A stretch of 64,000 bases of DNA from the IMG/VR virus record IMGVR_UViG_3300023235_000008, positions 1 to 64,000 of that record, one strand, 5' to 3'. Shown one piece after another: positions 14,904-19,810 of this stretch (its first letter is position 1; each line of letters opens with the position of its first letter). The notes under the pieces are model-generated. The model had not been told where the DNA came from and made no database searches. It worked only from the letters and a program-made list of their open reading frames with translations. The translations under genes and the position numbers were made by a program.

Positions 14904-15270
14904 TATTACGATTGTAACTTCACCTAACTATTTTTACGGCGACCAGCCTAGTCTGATGCTATTCGATGTATCGGGCGCTGATATTAAACTTATAATCGAA
15001 CTTATAATGGAAGCTAATCTTGTAATGAGCCTTCATTTATGTTATAATGGTAAATCCGATAGGGAATGGTTACTAAATACCGCAAGGCAATGCGACCGTG
15101 TGATAGTTAATTTAGAAAATCATACCCTAATCAAAGGATTTATATTGAATCATAAGAACGTTTCGTACTATAATAGTGATAATGATATTACGTCATTGAA
15201 CACCAACGAGTTAACCGATCCCCTAGATTATATAATGAGGTTTGTAAATGAGCAAAGACAAAGACAGTGA
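14887..15270 (+). CDS. Hypothetical protein
   Basis: Overlap-coupled ORF preceding clpX. Confidence 0.7.
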   Translation: MFLEDNITIVTSPNYFYGDQPSLMLFDVSGADIKLIIELIMEANLVMSLHLCYNGKSDREWLLNTARQCDRVIVNLENHTLIKGFILNHKNVSYYNSDNDITSLNTNELTDPLDYIMRFVNEQRQRQ

Positions 15271-16504
15271 TAAGACTAAAAACTTAGAATGTGATTTCTG
15301 CGGCAAGAATCGAAATGAAGTAGATAAACTCATTGTCGGTAATGAAACAAGCATTTGTAACGAATGTGTTGATCTTTGTCACGACATATTAGAAGATGAT
15401 CGTTATGCTAAGATAAAGAAATCTCTTATCAGCAAGGATCATCTTAATCCCATCATGATTAAAGCACACCTTGACCAATACGTAGTGTCACAAGACAATG
15501 CTAAAATCGCATTAAGTGTAGCCGTAGCCAATCATTTTAAACGTATCAATCACCCACCAAAAGACTTGAAAATCGAAAAATCAAACATTATGATTGCAGG
15601 TCCGACTGGCAATGGTAAGACGATGCTGGCACGTGCTATTGCAGAGTATCTTGAAGTTCCATTCGTTATCACCGATGCGACAACCTTAACCGAGGCGGGT
15701 TATGTCGGTGATGATGTAGAAAGTATCGTGTCACGATTGTTACATGTTGCTGGTGGTGACATAGAAAAGGCACAGAATGGTATTATCTTTATCGATGAGA
15801 TTGATAAGATTGCACGTAAAGGTGAAAATGCCAGTATTACACGTGATGTTAGTGGAGAAGGCGTTCAGCAAGCATTATTGAAGCTTGTAGAAGGCACTGA
15901 GTGTCGCATTGCCCCGCAAGGTGGACGCAAGCATCCCGGTCAGGATATGGTGAGCGTGGATACACATAACATTTTATTCATTGTTAGTGGAGCATTTGTT
16001 GGCTTGGATAAACTTATTGCTAAACGTCAGAAGCCTACATCAATCGGCTTTGGTGCGTCAGTAAACAAGATGGATGAAGATAATACGCATCTATTGGACC
16101 AAGTTGAGCCACACGATTTTGTAGACTTTGGGCTTATCCCTGAGTTCACAGGTAGATTTCCTGTATTCACAAATGTCCAGCGTTTAACAAGTGAGCAACT
16201 TGTTCATATTATGACCGATACAAAGAACAGTATTGTTGAGCAGTATCAATATTACTTTGATTTACAAGGTGTGTCGCTTGAGTTCACTGAATCCGCATTA
16301 ATGGCTATTGCTGAAAAGGCGGTTACATTGGATACGGGTGCACGTGGCTTGAAGAAGATTATCGAAGATGTTCTATTACATCATCAGTATAATCTATATA
16401 CATATGCTGAAGAAGGTGTGAAAAAACTTATTGTAACTGATGACACAATCATGTATAATGATAGAGTAAAGTTTGTTTATGCTGATAAAGAAGCAAACGA
16501 ATAA
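15248..16504 (+). CDS. clpX: ATP-dependent Clp protease ATPase ClpX
   Basis: Zn-binding CDFCGK..C..C; Walker A GPTGNGKT; [12 protein letters not shown]; IFIDEIDKI; [14 protein letters not shown]; TGARGL. Confidence 0.97.
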
Positions 16505-16519
16505 CCGGATAGGAAAAAA

Positions 16520-16771
16520 ATGAGAGAGTTTAAAGGAACAAGAATCGACGTTCGTAGTCGTCACGGCGATACGGAAGAACAGCGTGGTCGTGCTATTACA
16601 AATGCGATGCGCAAGTTCAAGAAGATGGTACAGAATGAGAATATCATTCAAGATTATCGTGAAGCACAGTTTTACGAAAAGCCAACAGATAAGCGTCGTC
16701 GTAGAAAGGCAGCAGCCATTCGCCGTTGTCAGAAAGCTGCACAAGAAGCAACATTGGAAAGAGGCTGGTGA
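16520..16771 (+). CDS. rpsU: 30S ribosomal protein bS21
   Basis: AMRKFKK...IIQDYREAQFYEKPTDKRRRRKAAAIRR. Confidence 0.9.
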   Translation: MREFKGTRIDVRSRHGDTEEQRGRAITNAMRKFKKMVQNENIIQDYREAQFYEKPTDKRRRRKAAAIRRCQKAAQEATLERGW

Positions 16772-17022
16772 TGAAAACATTAATCGCAGTAGTGGCATTA
16801 GTAGCCCTTTCGGGTTGTGCTAATAACTTTCCGTTTACTAACGTAGGCGGAACGACAGAGTATGAATATATTGGTTGTCATAAGGTTGATACGCCATCTA
16901 CCGAAGGTGTCTATCAGTTTGGACCACTTGGTGTTCATCCACGTTATGTAGGCAATCGTGTATTCTTTAAGCAGAAGAGTGCTGATGGCACGGTAGCCGA
17001 TACAAACTTGGAAAAATGCTAA
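16771..17022 (+). CDS. Putative lipoprotein
   Basis: Lipobox ALSGC after a hydrophobic signal peptide. Confidence 0.7.
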   Translation: MKTLIAVVALVALSGCANNFPFTNVGGTTEYEYIGCHKVDTPSTEGVYQFGPLGVHPRYVGNRVFFKQKSADGTVADTNLEKC

Positions 17023-17132
17023 TCGAACAATATAGATGTTTGCAATGCAATCATCAATATACTGGTCCAGCGGGACCAACTGGATGTCCTGTGTGTGACC
17101 ATATATATGTTAAATGGGAGAGTTACAAATGA
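17016..17132 (+). CDS. Small zinc-ribbon protein (38 aa)
   Basis: YRCLQCNH...GCPVCDHIYVKW. Confidence 0.6.
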   Translation: MLIEQYRCLQCNHQYTGPAGPTGCPVCDHIYVKWESYK

Positions 17133-17214
17133 CATTCGTAATCGGATTTCTAGTCGGATATTGTGTTCATTGGTTAATATTTGGTAATTGAATATTGTGT
17201 TCACAACTGGCTAA

Positions 17215-17365
17215 GATAAATAATGATGACAACGTGCCATTACGGGCGTTGCAATCGAGGCTTTGGAACATTGTGCCAGCGTAGCAAATCAAGTTCCATT
17301 TTAGTAGGTGCCAAATGGTTTGGGCTTACACACATTACTTGCTTATAACAAAGGAGTATAGCAAA
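17215..17365 (+). ncRNA. ROSE-like RNA thermometer in the hsp20 5' UTR
   Basis: Late promoter GATAAATA, four hairpins; the last pairs UACUU(G)CUU with AAGGAGUA (UUGCU opposite the SD, bulged G at 17341). Confidence 0.75.
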
Positions 17366-17803
17366 ATGAAAACTACACTATCACGCAGAAACTTACCTAA
17401 CTTTCTTGGATTCGACAGTATTTTTAATGAACTGGAACGTGCATCGGGAACTGTTCAATCAACGGCGGGTTATCCGCCATATAACGTAATCAGCGAAAAC
17501 GAAAATGCCTACACGGTTGAAGTCGCAGTAGCTGGTTTCGGGAAAGATGAGGTAACGCTTGAAGAACACAATGGTGAACTTATTATCCGTGGTGTCCTTC
17601 AGAATGAATCAGAATCGGATGAACAACGTAACTATCTACACAAAGGTATTTCAAACCGTAAGTTTGAACGCATCTTTAGACTGGCTGAACACGTTCAAGT
17701 GGCTGGCGCAGTTGTAGAAAATGGTATGTTAACGATTAAGTTGGTTCGTGAGGTTCCCGAAGAACTACAACCACGTACCATTAAGATTGAATACAAAGGA
17801 TAA
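17366..17803 (+). CDS. Small heat-shock protein (Hsp20/IbpA family)
   Basis: GYPPYNV, EVAVAGF, YLHKGISNRKFER, NGMLTIKL, PEELQPRTIKI. Confidence 0.95.
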   Translation: MKTTLSRRNLPNFLGFDSIFNELERASGTVQSTAGYPPYNVISENENAYTVEVAVAGFGKDEVTLEEHNGELIIRGVLQNESESDEQRNYLHKGISNRKFERIFRLAEHVQVAGAVVENGMLTIKLVREVPEELQPRTIKIEYKG

Positions 17804-17822
17804 TCCGTTAGCGAAAATAATG

Positions 17823-17858
17823 AGGGACAGGTGTAAAAGCCTGTCCCTTTTCCTTTTG
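17823..17858 (+). terminator. Rho-independent terminator
   Basis: AGGGACAGG-loop-CCTGTCCCT followed by a T-rich run. Confidence 0.85.
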
Positions 17859-17894
17859 TATAAATACATTATATATGTACATTAAGGACTAGTT

Positions 17895-18374
17895 ATGCAA
17901 AACAATATTCTATTGAAATGGTGGATTCAAACCGTAGTGGTTATGTTCGGTGCCGTTATGGCATCACATCTTGGATGGTGGGAAGCCTTATGGTATGCTG
18001 ACCAAACCAAGATTTCAATGGTAATCATTGCTGTATATCTATTTGCGACCATATCGTGTGGCATCATTGCTAAAAGAAAAGATACTAAGTTTCTGGATAG
18101 ACAAGGCGAGTATGTATGGTTTTCATGTGATGCAATGCTAACGCTTGGAATGATCGGAACGGTTGCTGGTTTTATTATGTTATTTGGCGATGCATTTACT
18201 AACATTGATGTAGAAAATACCGAGAACTTACAGGCTGTTATTGTTGATATGGCAGTGGGTATCGGCACAGCATTAACCACTACGCTTATGGGTCTTATTG
18301 GATACTTGTTAACCAAGCTTCAAATACAGGTTATTGAAAGCAGTTGGGAAGACGATGAAGTATCAGAGAAATAA
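17895..18374 (+). CDS. MotA/TolQ/ExbB-like membrane protein
   Basis: LGMIGTVAGF...GIGTALTTTLMGL TM signature. Confidence 0.75.
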   Translation: MQNNILLKWWIQTVVVMFGAVMASHLGWWEALWYADQTKISMVIIAVYLFATISCGIIAKRKDTKFLDRQGEYVWFSCDAMLTLGMIGTVAGFIMLFGDAFTNIDVENTENLQAVIVDMAVGIGTALTTTLMGLIGYLLTKLQIQVIESSWEDDEVSEK

Positions 18375-19011
18375 GCGATCAGGAACAGTCGTTGGCTTCA
18401 ATGACTTACTATTCAATCTATTAATCAGTTTTGTTTGTTTGTTTATTATTGCATTCATCATGATGAATCCCCCTACTAAAAAGAAATCGATTGATCCAAA
18501 GGCTGAGTATATGATTACTATGACGTGGCCAGATGGTGACACGAATGACATTGACCTATGGGCAAAAAATACCCATGGCGCTGTTAGCTTTCGTGCACGT
18601 GATAATGAAACGATGCATCTTGACCGTGATGATCTCGGACAAACGAATGACAAGCTTGTATTGGATGGTGTCGAAGTTGTAAATCCTATGAATACTGAGG
18701 CTATTGCTATTCGCCAAACAATAGAAGGCGAGTATACTATTAGCATTCATTGGTATTCAACGAAAGATGATAGCCTAGACGTTGTGCCTGTCGAGATTGA
18801 AGTGATACGTATAAATCCATATAGACTTATGGCTAAGAGAACTGTTATAATGACAATAGTAGGTCAAGAACAAACGGCGTTTAAGTTTACAATGAGTGGC
18901 ATGGGATTGGCAAAGGCATTTACTACTGAACAAGAGGAATGGGTTACTGAGCAGGTAGCGAAGTTTCGCAGTGATGCCATCGTACACGAGACACCCGACA
19001 CAGGAAATTAA
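18355..19011 (+). CDS. Single-TM partner protein (ExbD/MotB-like N-terminus)
   Basis: GFNDLLFNLL TM with a conserved Asp; periplasmic domain with DIDLW and LDRDDLG. Confidence 0.65.
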   Translation: MKYQRNKRSGTVVGFNDLLFNLLISFVCLFIIAFIMMNPPTKKKSIDPKAEYMITMTWPDGDTNDIDLWAKNTHGAVSFRARDNETMHLDRDDLGQTNDKLVLDGVEVVNPMNTEAIAIRQTIEGEYTISIHWYSTKDDSLDVVPVEIEVIRINPYRLMAKRTVIMTIVGQEQTAFKFTMSGMGLAKAFTTEQEEWVTEQVAKFRSDAIVHETPDTGN

Positions 19012-19500
19012 ATGGAATTCTTTTTAACAACGACAGGCGCATTGGTTAGTATTTGGGTTGCATTAACTATTGTATTTTTAATGCTGGTAGCTAAGTCAAC
19101 CTTAACATTAACTAGAAAAATGACGATTGTACCATTGACATTCCTACTTCTGTATGTTACTATAAGTGATACAATAAATCTATTCGGATATCCTTATGAT
19201 GGTTATCCAGTAGGTGAATTTCAAATCGTGTCACATCGTGTGGACGAAACAAAGACTATTGTGTTATGGGTTCGGAATGATGATGGTGATCGTCTGTATC
19301 GTTTCCCATATGATGAAAATGCGAAAAAGGCACTTGATGCTGCTAAGAAGAAAGCTGACAAAGGTGTGCGACAGATGGGTAAGTTTGAACGTTCAAACAA
19401 ATCCAAAGGAAATAAGAACCAAGGCATGTCACGTGACAGTGAAAACTCTTTAAAAGTATATGATTTTCCACATCAACAACGTATTCCTAAAAACCAATGA
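19012..19500 (+). CDS. Membrane protein, third gene of the ExbB-like cassette
   Basis: Two N-terminal TM helices; GYP...; abuts the previous stop. Confidence 0.7.
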   Translation: MEFFLTTTGALVSIWVALTIVFLMLVAKSTLTLTRKMTIVPLTFLLLYVTISDTINLFGYPYDGYPVGEFQIVSHRVDETKTIVLWVRNDDGDRLYRFPYDENAKKALDAAKKKADKGVRQMGKFERSNKSKGNKNQGMSRDSENSLKVYDFPHQQRIPKNQ

Positions 19501-19507
19501 GGTAATA

Positions 19508-19810
19508 ATGACTGATTCAGATATTGCGATTGCTACAAAAACGAAGGTAAGAGTTAAAGAACCTTCTATGTTCAACGTGATTTATTTAAACGACGATGCA
19601 ACAACAATGCAGTTCGTTATCGATACGCTTATGCGTCATTTTGATTATGATGATGAACGTGCGATTACTAAGATGGCTGAAATCCACGAAGAAGATTCCG
19701 CGGTTGTCGCCACGCTACCATACGAGATTGCCGAACAGAAAGGCGTCGAAGTAACACTTGAAGCCCGTGCGCTTGGTTTTCCACTTCAAGTCAAAGTAGA
19801 GCCATCGTGA
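19508..19810 (+). CDS. clpS: ATP-dependent Clp protease adaptor ClpS
   Basis: NVIYLNDDATTMQFV, EIHEE, EIAEQK, FPLQVKVE. Confidence 0.95.
   Translation: MTDSDIAIATKTKVRVKEPSMFNVIYLNDDATTMQFVIDTLMRHFDYDDERAITKMAEIHEEDSAVVATLPYEIAEQKGVEVTLEARALGFPLQVKVEPS

What the first reader, a model, noticed from the sequence alone, without database searches (positions are those of the whole stretch)
17215..17365. Phage-encoded ROSE-like RNA thermometer upstream of hsp20
Seen: a 140-nt leader after a late promoter with stems CAACG/CGTTG, TGGAAC/GTTCCA and CCAAA/TTTGG. The last hairpin pairs 17336-17344 (UACUU-G-CUU) with 17351-17358 (AAGGAGUA) and leaves G17341 bulged. Established: ROSE elements in alpha/gamma-proteobacterial sHSP genes have a U(U/C)GCU motif pairing with the SD and a bulged G in the last of 2-4 hairpins. 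Inference: the phage keeps host-style temperature-gated translation under a phage late promoter.
Basis: partly seen in the sequence, partly recalled or inferred. Interest (0 to 1): 0.6.

Follow-up and report, generated by a model that had tools for sequence, protein, structure and literature searches.

The report
Phage ROSE-like leader on hsp20
A salt-lake jumbo phage carries, in front of its small heat-shock gene, the same kind of ribosome-site-masking RNA hairpin that bacteria use as a thermometer. The same leader sits before hsp20 in nearly all sampled phages, cyanophages included, and before dnaK in six further phage contigs.

Summary
All four stems exist. UACUUGCUU (17336-17344) pairs with AAGGAGUA (17351-17358), leaving G17341 bulged, 9 nt upstream of the hsp20 ATG (17366).

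Energy does not make this convincing. The whole-leader fold has z = -0.28, and hsp20 ranks 63rd of 150 genes for the energy needed to open its ribosome site. The evidence is comparative:
- 74 of 80 IMG/VR hsp20 loci (39-63% protein identity) carry U(U/C)GCU-loop-AGGA next to the start codon.
- A covariance model built without the window finds one significant site in the whole 230-kb phage record, this one (29.9 bits, E about 3e-5).
- The model hits the hsp20 leader in all 11 cultured phages tested, including S-PM2, Syn19, P-SSM2, HTVC008M, Melnitz and PA5oct.
- The upstream hairpin covaries strongly. The anti-SD is nearly invariant.
- The same cassette precedes phage dnaK genes.

GATAAATA (17215) is the genome's most enriched upstream motif, and a gp55-family late sigma factor is encoded.

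Caveats:
- Rfam ROSE_3 scores 18.6 bits against a gathering score of 43.
- In this window, nearest-neighbour folding prefers an alternative register that masks the AUG instead.
- No RNA data or temperature test exists.

Verdict: a real, conserved ROSE-like element. It is a new phage-borne member of a known kind, and its thermometer function is inferred.

The parts
17215..17222 (+). GATAAATA, the phage's late-type promoter motif (T4 TATAAATA-like). The inferred TSS is about 17228-17231.
   Evidence: GATAAATA is the most frequent sense-strand 8-mer in upstream regions of the 230-kb record. 23 of its 35 genome-wide copies lie there, against 7 antisense. [GT]ATAAATA lies a median of 21 nt before start codons. 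A gp55-family late sigma factor is encoded. A diverged relative's homology starts at 17213. 32 of 73 distinct relatives have NATAAATA within 15 nt (mostly 3-6 nt) before the first hairpin.
17230..17251 (+). Hairpin I: CAACGU, bulged G, CC, then GG, GCGUUG. It has the same 'stem + bulged G + CC/GG' module as hairpin III.
   Evidence: Sequence. MFE fold. Weak partial match to model positions 1-21 (8.3 bits). The relative's only change here is in the loop (17243 C>T).
17264..17298 (+). Hairpin II: UGGAAC/GUUCCA outer stem with an imperfect interior. It is specific to this lineage.
   Evidence: It is absent from the 63%-identical relative L015. The variant 17274 T>G breaks a predicted inner pair, so only the outer stem is credible.
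17304..17329 (+). Hairpin III: GUAGGU, bulged G, CCAAA, loop UGG, UUUGG, GCUUAC. This is the conserved 5' hairpin of the two-hairpin core.
   Evidence: It matches model R1 positions 1-21. Family-wide, 7 of 8 pairs show changes on both sides and 98% of cells are paired. Three compensatory changes separate it from L015. In the salt-lake relative A13-U21 becomes G-C and the stem is kept.
17336..17358 (+). Hairpin IV, the ROSE-type hairpin. Anti-SD UACUUGCUU 17336-44 contains UUGCU at 17339-43 and the bulged G17341. The loop is 17345-50. The SD strand is AAGGAGUA 17351-58.
   Evidence: Rfam ROSE_3 alignment. R1 alignment. The anti-SD is nearly invariant in 50 distinct viral leaders: UG 46 and CG 2 at the U/C position, outer pair UA 35 and AU 3. 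The relative has only a one-base loop insertion here, while its CDS differs at 27 of 156 positions. Predicted dG is -7.8, -5.1 and -3.0 kcal/mol at 10, 25 and 37 C.
17360..17368 (+). AGCAA (17360-64) and AAUG (17365-68). These are the alternative partners of UUGCU 17339-43 and CAUU 17333-36, in a competing register that masks the start codon.
   Evidence: This is the MFE and about 0.9 of the ensemble in nearest-neighbour folding. AGCA lies between SD and AUG in only 5 of 50 distinct leaders, so it is not the family-wide structure.
17366..17803 (+). hsp20 (IbpA-like small heat-shock protein, 145 aa).
   Evidence: Pfam HSP20 1.1e-17. phrog_432 5e-36. It is 42% identical to E. coli IbpA. The equivalents of IbpA Y34, R93 and R97 are kept; the K98 equivalent is Ile.
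17822..17849 (+). Intrinsic terminator that closes a monocistronic cassette.
   Evidence: 11-bp stem followed by a T run. The relative's homology ends at 17851.

Best explanation
The stretch 17213-17851 is a self-contained phage cassette. It holds a late-type promoter motif (GATAAATA), a structured leader of about 137 nt, hsp20 and a terminator.

The leader is a ROSE-like translational control element. Its conserved core is two hairpins. The first is a stable 5' hairpin (17304-29). The second is a weak 3' hairpin in which UUGCU, with a bulged G, pairs with the SD AAGGAG (17336-58). This window has two extra 5' hairpins.

The proposed mechanism has three steps. The phage's gp55-family sigma factor makes the mRNA late in infection. 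At low temperature the weak hairpin, or in this phage its alternative register over the AUG, keeps 30S subunits off the start site. Warming melts it and Hsp20 is made.

Shown here:
- the structure elements;
- their conservation and covariation across phages;
- the specificity of the cassette for chaperone genes (hsp20 and dnaK);
- the promoter-motif statistics.

Inferred:
- the TSS;
- late timing;
- melting in the physiological range and the temperature response itself;
- any added feedback by Hsp20 binding its own leader.
For: - Pairing, bulged G, SD and ATG spacing are read directly from the sequence.
- ROSE_3 is the best Rfam family for the window (18.6 bits, full model). It is also the best family for relatives: L015 35.8, L038 31.8, Melnitz 34.1.
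- 74 of 80 viral hsp20 loci carry the motif.
- CM R1, built without the window, hits the window once in the 230-kb record, at 29.9 bits and E = 2.8e-5.
- Covariation: 97.3% of cells are paired against 81.7% in shuffles. 126 cells have double changes against 37 in shuffles. No shuffle of 500 reaches the observed values, and slid controls collapse.
- All 11 cultured phages tested have the element ending at the annotated hsp20 start.
- The U/C alternation opposite the SD G, and the absence of A or G there, fits RNA pairing.
- A salt-lake relative keeps 17328-17373 unchanged except for a loop insertion, while its CDS diverges. Its hairpin III changes are compensatory.
- An IMG/VR motif scan found 82 sites. 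66 directly precede an hsp20 homologue, 2 more precede hsp20 genes cut by a contig end, and 6 precede dnaK. The dnaK leaders score 35.6-45.4 bits with R1.
- Promoter.
[quoted passage not shown] It also describes two-hairpin short forms in which hairpin II alone is sufficient (PMC3669281).
Against: - No Rfam ROSE model reaches its gathering score.
- The whole-leader MFE is no better than shuffles, z = -0.28.
- Nearest-neighbour folding of this window gives the ROSE register only about 0.05 probability. The AUG-masking register gets about 0.9.
- The energy to open the ribosome site ranks 63rd of 150 genes. The gene starts used there were crude.
- The SD helix shows almost no covariation, because the SD is constrained.
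- No RNA run holds the phage, so the TSS, the timing and any temperature effect are untested.
Confidence: 0.65

Rival explanations
1. The element is real, but in this particular phage the working structure is the alternative register. UUGCU 17339-43 pairs perfectly with AGCAA 17360-64, and CAUU 17333-36 pairs with AAUG 17365-68. The start codon is masked rather than the SD. The outcome is still a meltable block of initiation, but the bulged-G ROSE geometry is not used.
For: This register is the MFE at 10-42 C. It holds about 0.9 of the ensemble. dG is -3.8 against -3.0 kcal/mol at 37 C. AGCAA also lies just before the AUG in L015, L034, L064, L091 and S-PM2. The relative keeps 17359-17373 unchanged.
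Against: Only 5 of 50 distinct leaders have AGCA in the spacer. The ROSE register is available in nearly all of them, and it is the MFE in 29 of 50, including the nearest relative L015. Nearest-neighbour rules ignore the non-canonical pairs known from the ROSE NMR structure. That last point rests on established knowledge and was not tested here.
Confidence: 0.25
2. The leader is mainly an operator for the chaperone itself. Hsp20 would bind its own structured 5' UTR and repress translation until protein aggregates titrate it away, as E. coli IbpA does. The signal would then be proteotoxic load during virion assembly rather than temperature as such.
For: E. coli and Vibrio IbpA repress their own ROSE-type leaders. 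This needs Y34, R93 and R97/K98 (PMC10474464). The window's Hsp20 is IbpA-like and keeps the Y34, R93 and R97 equivalents, unlike IbpB.
Against: The same leader precedes phage dnaK, a protein with no such known RNA binding. The K98 equivalent is Ile. PA5oct has Lys at the R93 position, where even Lys abolishes repression in E. coli IbpA, yet it keeps the leader. The R93-type Arg is widely conserved in small heat-shock proteins; this last point is from my own knowledge. This rival can coexist with thermosensing.
Confidence: 0.2
3. The hairpins are a constitutive feature: a 5' stabiliser against RNases plus a fixed damper of a very strong SD. There would be no regulatory response.
For: The 5' hairpin starts within a few nt of the inferred TSS in most relatives. 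The predicted opening energy is ordinary.
Against: This does not explain why an exact U(U/C)GCU anti-SD with a bulged purine is kept across phages whose proteins are 28-45% identical. It also does not explain why the cassette is confined to two heat-shock chaperone genes.
Confidence: 0.1
4. The conserved TGCTTA is a DNA signal, a T4 MotA-box middle promoter, and not an RNA anti-SD.
For: The MotA box consensus TGCTTtA (quoted in PMC9004378) matches cTTGCTTa.
Against: The box lies about 22 nt before the ATG, so a transcript started from it would lack the SD and start codon. No TAnnnT follows at the right distance. Cyanophages use CTCGCTT, which breaks the box but strengthens the pair with the SD G. 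Cyanomyoviruses lack motA/asiA; that point is from my own knowledge.
Confidence: 0.03

Closest known systems
Short two-hairpin ROSE-like thermometers of Pseudomonas ibpA (Rfam ROSE_3, RF02523; Krajewski et al. 2013, PMC3669281)
   Same: Both are leaders of about 60 nt with a stable G+C-rich hairpin I. Both have a short hairpin II in which U(U/C)GCU pairs imperfectly with the SD. Both control an IbpA-type sHSP gene. ROSE_3 is the best Rfam match, over the full length of the model. The 'stem, bulged G, CC(G)' layout of hairpin I is shared.
   Different: The score is below Rfam's gathering score (18.6 bits here, up to 35.8 in relatives, against 43). The SD/anti-SD core is flanked by A-U pairs, not the G-C pairs stressed for Pseudomonas. 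The promoter is a phage late-type or sigma-70 motif instead of sigma-32. The carrier is a virus. This window adds two more 5' hairpins.
Classical ROSE1 of Bradyrhizobium hspA and rhizobial ROSE (Rfam RF00435)
   Same: Both have four hairpins, with the SD in the last one. Both have the U(U/C)GCU motif and a bulged G opposite the SD. Both control an sHSP gene.
   Different: There is no sequence-level match to RF00435 in the window. In ROSE1 the last hairpin is longer and also pairs the AUG. The non-canonical geometry (G-G pair, base triple) cannot be tested here.
E. coli ibpA ROSE-like leader with IbpA self-repression (Rfam RF01832; PMC10474464)
   Same: The protein is IbpA-like (42% identity) and keeps the Y34, R93 and R97 equivalents. 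The leader is structured and masks the SD.
   Different: R1 does not hit the E. coli ibpA leader. It weakly hits the ibpB leader instead (20.5 bits). Self-binding is untested for any phage Hsp20.
Phage lambda cIII RNA thermometer
   Same: It is a phage-encoded mRNA whose structure sets translation according to temperature.
   Different: It is a two-state switch in which high temperature favours the OFF structure. It controls a lysis-lysogeny regulator. It has no ROSE motif and no homology. This comparison rests on my own knowledge.
T4-type late promoters (TATAAATA, gp55 sigma)
   Same: The motif, its short distance to genes and its strand bias all match. A gp55-family sigma factor is encoded.
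   Different: G is as common as T at position 1. No gp45 clamp homologue was found in the 65%-complete record. Late timing has not been measured. Several relatives add a consensus -35 box, so their hsp20 may also be read early.

Membership tests
ROSE-like RNA thermometers | Lies in the 5' UTR of a small heat-shock (Hsp20/IbpA) gene. | tested here: met
   The hairpin ends 8 nt before the ATG of a Pfam HSP20 ORF. UTR status rests on the promoter motif at 17215, not on a mapped TSS.
ROSE-like RNA thermometers | A U(U/C)GCU motif pairs imperfectly with the SD in the 3'-proximal hairpin (definition in PMC3669281). | tested here: met
   UUGCU 17339-43 lies opposite AGGA 17352-55. It is conserved as UUGCU or UCGCU in 48 of 50 distinct viral leaders and in the cultured phages.
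ROSE-like RNA thermometers | A bulged G opposite the SD (G83 of ROSE1). | tested here: met
   G17341 has no partner in the register. The position is G in all distinct leaders shown except L072, where it is A. The syn G-G geometry is not testable here.
ROSE-like RNA thermometers | Two to four hairpins, with stable 5' hairpins before the sensing hairpin. | tested here: met
   The window has four hairpins. The conserved 5' hairpin has 7 of 8 covarying pairs.
ROSE-like RNA thermometers | Scores at or above the gathering score of an Rfam ROSE model (RF00435, RF01832, RF02523). | tested here: not met
   There is no hit at gathering score. ROSE_3 scores 18.6 bits against 43, E = 0.15. This is an operational cut-off, not a biological feature. 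Proteobacterial hsp20 leaders sampled here (L103, L125) also fall below it.
ROSE-like RNA thermometers | Translation is repressed at low temperature and released by heat; the hairpin melts in the physiological range. | not testable with these tools
   Only predicted stabilities are available: -7.8 kcal/mol at 10 C to -2.1 at 42 C. These fit a thermometer but do not prove one.
ROSE-like RNA thermometers | Occurs in alpha- and gamma-proteobacterial genomes behind sigma-32 or sigma-70 heat-shock promoters. | tested here: not met
   The element is on a virus record, behind a T4-like late motif. This is a difference of carrier and promoter, not of mechanism.
Phage hsp20-leader family defined here (model R1) | A full-length match to a covariance model built from independent viral hsp20 leaders, ending at the start codon. 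| tested here: met
   29.9 bits, E = 2.8e-5, model positions 1-56, at 17304-17368. It is the only significant hit in the 230-kb record.
T4-type late promoter | A TATAAATA-like motif upstream, plus a gp55-family sigma factor in the genome. | tested here: met
   GATAAATA lies at 17215. Motif enrichment. phrog_12791 at 3.4e-75. Late timing and the TSS were not tested.

The most novel reading that the evidence does not exclude
The element is not a one-off capture. It would be the signature of a phage-borne heat-shock regulon.

A promoter-plus-ROSE cassette has long been carried by T4-like and jumbo phages. It gates late-made chaperones (Hsp20, and DnaK in some phages) by temperature or aggregate load, independently of host sigma-32. 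It is present even in cyanophages, whose hosts are not known to use ROSE elements.

If true, phage progeny assembly would be tuned to ambient temperature by the virus's own sensor. hsp20 is a core cyanomyovirus gene, and its unexplained role would become experimentally tractable.
Probability: 0.4. Interest if true: 0.75.

Novelty: new member of a known kind. Interest (0 to 1): 0.6.

Why it matters
RNA thermometers are regarded as bacterial devices. Apart from lambda cIII, I know of no phage-encoded example. A 2024 review only speculates that phage RNAs might behave like bacterial riboswitches and RNA thermometers (PMC10884466). Five full-text searches found no paper that links a ROSE-like element to a phage hsp20.

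The window's element is one member of a large family that Rfam thresholds miss. That family sits on hsp20, which is a core gene of marine cyanomyoviruses with no settled function (PMC3037559). It also sits on phage dnaK.

If the family senses temperature, part of the phage late programme would respond directly to ambient temperature. This bears on virus-host dynamics in warming waters. It would also provide compact, AT-rich thermosensor parts.

The claim can be tested directly in cultured systems: S-PM2, Syn19, Melnitz and PA5oct.

Tried and rejected
- Rfam at gathering score gave nothing in the 64-kb window.
- The whole-leader MFE z-score was -0.28, so the fold energy is uninformative.
- RNAalifold on a raw MAFFT alignment of 50 leaders gave 0 pairs. 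This was an alignment artefact. It was replaced by a hand-structured seed and a covariance model.
- The energy to open -16..+4 at 25 C ranks hsp20 63rd of 150 genes. Its ribosome site is not unusually occluded under nearest-neighbour rules. The gene starts used were crude.
- The upstream ORF 17223-17348 (41 aa) was rejected as coding. It has no SD and starts at or before the inferred TSS. A relative carries a 4-nt deletion and three 1-nt insertions inside it.
- The MotA-box reading was rejected; see the rival explanations.
- Direct searches with T4 gp55 and gp45 proteins found nothing. Profiles found the gp55 family but no gp45.
- Megablast of the locus against GenBank phages found no match.
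- A ClpX search gave only about 50% matches to jumbo phages of varied hosts, and the tRNA scan found none. Neither names the host.
- Sequencing runs: only DNA runs from salt-lake metagenomes hold this phage. The TSS and expression therefore could not be examined.
- The genome search with the RNA model failed on the server. The rest of the record was fetched as loci and searched instead.
- The large protein searches, structure prediction and complex prediction were not needed and were not run.
No alternative genetic code was used.

Full report
**Context.** The window is the first 64 kb of a 230,059-bp IMG/VR virus record that CheckV rates about 65% complete. Near-identical DNA occurs only in salt-lake metagenomes, and none of those runs is RNA. 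The region around the finding encodes proteostasis functions. ClpX lies at 15248-16504, ribosomal protein S21 at 16520-16771, Hsp20 at 17366-17803, a MotA/ExbB-like protein at 17895-18374 and ClpS at 19460-19810.

**The observation.** The last hairpin pairs 17336-17344 (UACUUGCUU) with 17351-17358 (AAGGAGUA). G17341 is unpaired and the loop is 6 nt. The SD AAGGAG (17351-56) lies 9 nt before the ATG at 17366. A terminator follows the gene at 17822-49. The intergenic space is about 230 nt, and GATAAATA lies at 17215-22.

**Energy and simple statistics do not make the case.**
- The whole leader folds no better than shuffles, with z = -0.28.
- The loose pattern T[TC]GCT..AGGA occurs 23 times in the record.
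- The predicted energy to open the ribosome site ranks hsp20 63rd of 150 genes.
- Rfam finds nothing at gathering score.
- With permissive thresholds, ROSE_3 (RF02523) is the best family and aligns over its full length at 17304-17371. It scores only 18.6 bits against a gathering score of 43.

**The comparative evidence makes the case.**
- Scans of IMG/VR with the Hsp20 protein gave 80 loci. Three are identical to the window and the rest are 39-63% identical. In 74 of the 80, T[TC]GCT-N-AGGA lies directly before the start codon.
- The leaders share a two-hairpin core. The first hairpin has a variable stem, a bulged G and a CC/GG clamp. After a short spacer comes (U/A)CUUGCUU-loop-AAGGAG.
- I built covariance model R1 from 12 relatives, excluding the window and its close kin. 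It hits the hsp20 leader in nearly every locus. It hits the window exactly once, at 17304-17368, with 29.9 bits. Over the whole 230-kb record this is the only significant hit, at E = 2.8e-5. The next hit has 14.7 bits.
- On the model alignment, 97.3% of cells are paired against 81.7% in shuffles. 126 cells have changes on both sides against 37 in shuffles. The signal collapses when partners are slid by one to three columns.
- Hairpin 1 carries the covariation, in 7 of 8 pairs. The SD helix is almost invariant, as expected when one strand is the SD. It still shows U or C (never A or G) opposite the SD G, and U-A to A-U swaps at the outer pair.
- The nearest relative, L015 (63% protein identity), differs from the window by three compensatory pairs in hairpin III. 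It scores 35.8 bits with ROSE_3.

**A natural variant from the same lakes.** Contigs of a diverged relative align to the window only from 17213 to 17851. That span runs from two bases before GATAAATA to the end of the terminator. The flanks on both sides are unrelated. The promoter motif, leader, gene and terminator therefore form a portable cassette.
- Inside the leader, the changes in hairpin III keep the stem. A13-U21 becomes G-C, and other changes are consistent with pairing.
- The stretch 17328-17373 is unchanged except for one extra A in the loop.
- The coding sequence differs at 27 of 156 positions.
- Indels of 4, 1, 1 and 1 nt rule out the 41-codon upstream ORF as a gene.

**Generality.** I fetched the hsp20 loci of 11 cultured phages. 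R1 hits every one of them, and each hit ends at the annotated start codon.

| Phage | R1 score (bits) |
|---|---|
| Melnitz-3 | 50.6 |
| Syn19 | 45.2 |
| PA5oct | 35.0 |
| S-PM2 | 30.9 |
| RN05-S | 30.1 |
| P-SSM2 | 30.0 |
| C48C1 | 27.6 |
| S-CRM01 | 26.1 |
| HTVC104P | 25.2 |
| ACG-2014f | 23.1 |
| HTVC008M | 20.2 |

Cyanophages use the UCGCU form of the motif. Rfam again stays below threshold; the best score is 34.1 bits.

A tree of 75 Hsp20 proteins puts 21 genuine alpha- and gamma-proteobacterial sequences in one supported clade (97/89). Their leaders score little or nothing with R1: 0 bits for most and 30 bits at most (L099). The viral sequences lie outside this clade. So do eight AT-rich 'MAG' contigs that carry the viral leader type and are probably phage DNA. 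The leader is therefore a trait of the phage hsp20 lineage and not a recent copy from the present host.

**Specificity for chaperone genes.** I scanned IMG/VR for TCTTGCTT-N3-8-AAGGAGA and examined 82 sites.
- 66 directly precede an hsp20 homologue.
- 2 more precede hsp20 genes cut by a contig end.
- 6 precede a phage-encoded DnaK (Pfam HSP70 at 1.7e-256). These also have the late motif and hairpin 1, and R1 scores them at 35.6-45.4 bits.
- 1 precedes a 65-aa unknown ORF.
- The remainder lack hairpin 1 or an ORF.

Two contigs carry dnaK and hsp20 in tandem, each with its own copy of the leader. In one of them (L201), ClpS follows. Two unrelated heat-shock chaperones share the same leader. This favours a stress or temperature signal over a purely Hsp20-specific operator.

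**The promoter.**
- [GT]ATAAATA occurs 65 times in the record.
- NATAAATA occurs 109 times, and 71 of these lie in the 12% of the genome that is non-coding.
- GATAAATA is the single most frequent sense-strand 8-mer upstream of genes: 23 sense, 7 antisense and 35 genome-wide.
- The motif normally lies a median of 21 nt before a start codon. For hsp20 it lies 143 nt before the true ATG, which leaves room for the structured leader.
- The record encodes a gp55-family late sigma factor. It matches phrog_12791 at 3.4e-75 in two stretches separated by an insert of about 320 aa. That insert gives a weak intein-domain hit.
- In 32 of 73 distinct relatives, NATAAATA lies within 15 nt (mostly 3-6 nt) before hairpin 1. 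In the window it lies 7 nt before hairpin I.
- Several relatives add a consensus TTGACA box at the right spacing, so their hsp20 may also be read early.

'Late promoter' is thus well supported as a motif assignment. The TSS and the timing have not been measured.

**The competing register.** In this window, ViennaRNA prefers UUGCU 17339-43 paired with AGCAA 17360-64, plus CAUU 17333-36 paired with AAUG 17365-68. This masks the start codon and leaves the SD in a loop. Its dG is -3.8 kcal/mol at 37 C, against -3.0 for the ROSE register. It takes about 0.9 of the ensemble. AGCA occurs in the SD-AUG spacer of only 5 of 50 distinct leaders. The ROSE register is the MFE in 29 of 50, including L015. 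I take the ROSE register as the family structure. The alternative may be a real local variant. Both are weak helices over the initiation region, so the functional prediction is the same.

**Other readings.**
- IbpA-type self-repression. E. coli IbpA binds its own ROSE-type leader and needs Y34, R93 and R97/K98 to do so (PMC10474464). The phage protein keeps the first three. Feedback by Hsp20 is therefore possible. The dnaK leaders, and the Lys at this position in PA5oct, argue that it is not the main logic.
- A MotA-box promoter. Position and the cyanophage CTCGCTT variant exclude it.
- A purely constitutive stabiliser. This does not explain the conserved anti-SD or the restriction to chaperone genes.

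[quoted passage not shown] Such elements have two to four hairpins, and short two-hairpin forms of 61-62 nt occur in Pseudomonas (PMC3669281). By these criteria the element qualifies.
- It differs in failing Rfam's score cut-offs.
- It lacks the G-C pairs that flank the core in Pseudomonas.
- It is driven by a phage promoter.
- It resides on viruses.

Five full-text searches found no report of such an element on a phage hsp20. I file it as a new, phage-borne member of the ROSE-like kind. Its structure and conservation are shown. Its thermosensing is inferred.

**Housekeeping.** Read laying was given 1,201 bases. Only table 11 was used. The costly protein searches were not needed.

Noticed in passing
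L201:722-777 and 775-2679; also L196, L203, L242, L263 (IMG/VR contigs): Phage-encoded DnaK/Hsp70 genes (Pfam HSP70 at 1.7e-256) carry the same late-motif plus two-hairpin ROSE-like leader, at 35.6-45.4 bits with R1. In L201 and L242, dnaK and hsp20 lie in tandem, each with its own copy. In L201, ClpS follows. I know of no described ROSE-type element on a dnaK gene.
   Followed up: partly
window 17213-17851 and 17860 onward: A diverged salt-lake relative shares exactly the stretch from promoter motif to terminator of hsp20, with unrelated flanks. The next homology block starts at the TATAAATA (17859) of the following gene, on other contigs. Genes seem to be shuffled as promoter-bounded cassettes.
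   Followed up: partly
G000:C1:205021-206847 (L094:1030-2856), outside the window: The gp55-family late sigma factor is a 608-aa ORF. The phrog_12791 match is split in two by an insert of about 320 aa. The insert gives a weak Intein_splicing hit (E = 0.004, below cut-off). This may be an intein in the late sigma factor.
   Followed up: partly
window 15248-19810: A proteostasis neighbourhood: ClpX, ribosomal protein S21, Hsp20, a MotA/ExbB-like membrane protein and ClpS. Hsp20 next to ClpS recurs in jumbo phage PA5oct and in IMG/VR contig L201.
   Followed up: no
window 17160-17169 and 17194-17203: A direct 10-nt repeat, ATTGTGTTCA, lies 34 nt apart just upstream of the promoter motif. It overlaps the end of a 20-codon hydrophobic ORF (17130-17192). 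It lies outside the conserved cassette, and its function is unknown.
   Followed up: no
L095, L100, L102, L112, L115, L154, L168, L173 (genome contigs): Eight contigs filed under bacterial MAGs carry viral-type hsp20 genes. The MAG labels include Enterobacteriaceae, Haliscomenobacter, Fischerella, Sphingobacteriales, Rhodobacteraceae, Woeseiaceae and Deltaproteobacteria. All carry hsp20 genes that group with viral sequences in the tree. Seven have a clear R1 leader (28-57 bits); L173 scores only 14 bits. They are probably phage DNA binned into MAGs.
   Followed up: partly
L186:2402-2474 (-), E. coli K-12 ibpA-ibpB spacer: The phage model R1 gives 20.5 bits on the leader of ibpB, not on the ROSE-like leader of ibpA. 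From memory, a second thermometer before ibpB has been described.
   Followed up: no
L233:4155-4404: A 65-aa ORF with no Pfam match is preceded by a full R1 leader (46.4 bits) and the late motif. It is a third kind of gene behind this cassette.
   Followed up: no
whole record G000: There are 13 perfect TTGACA-N16-18-TATAAT sites, 10 of them in the 12% non-coding DNA. These are likely host sigma-70 early promoters alongside the late motif.
   Followed up: no
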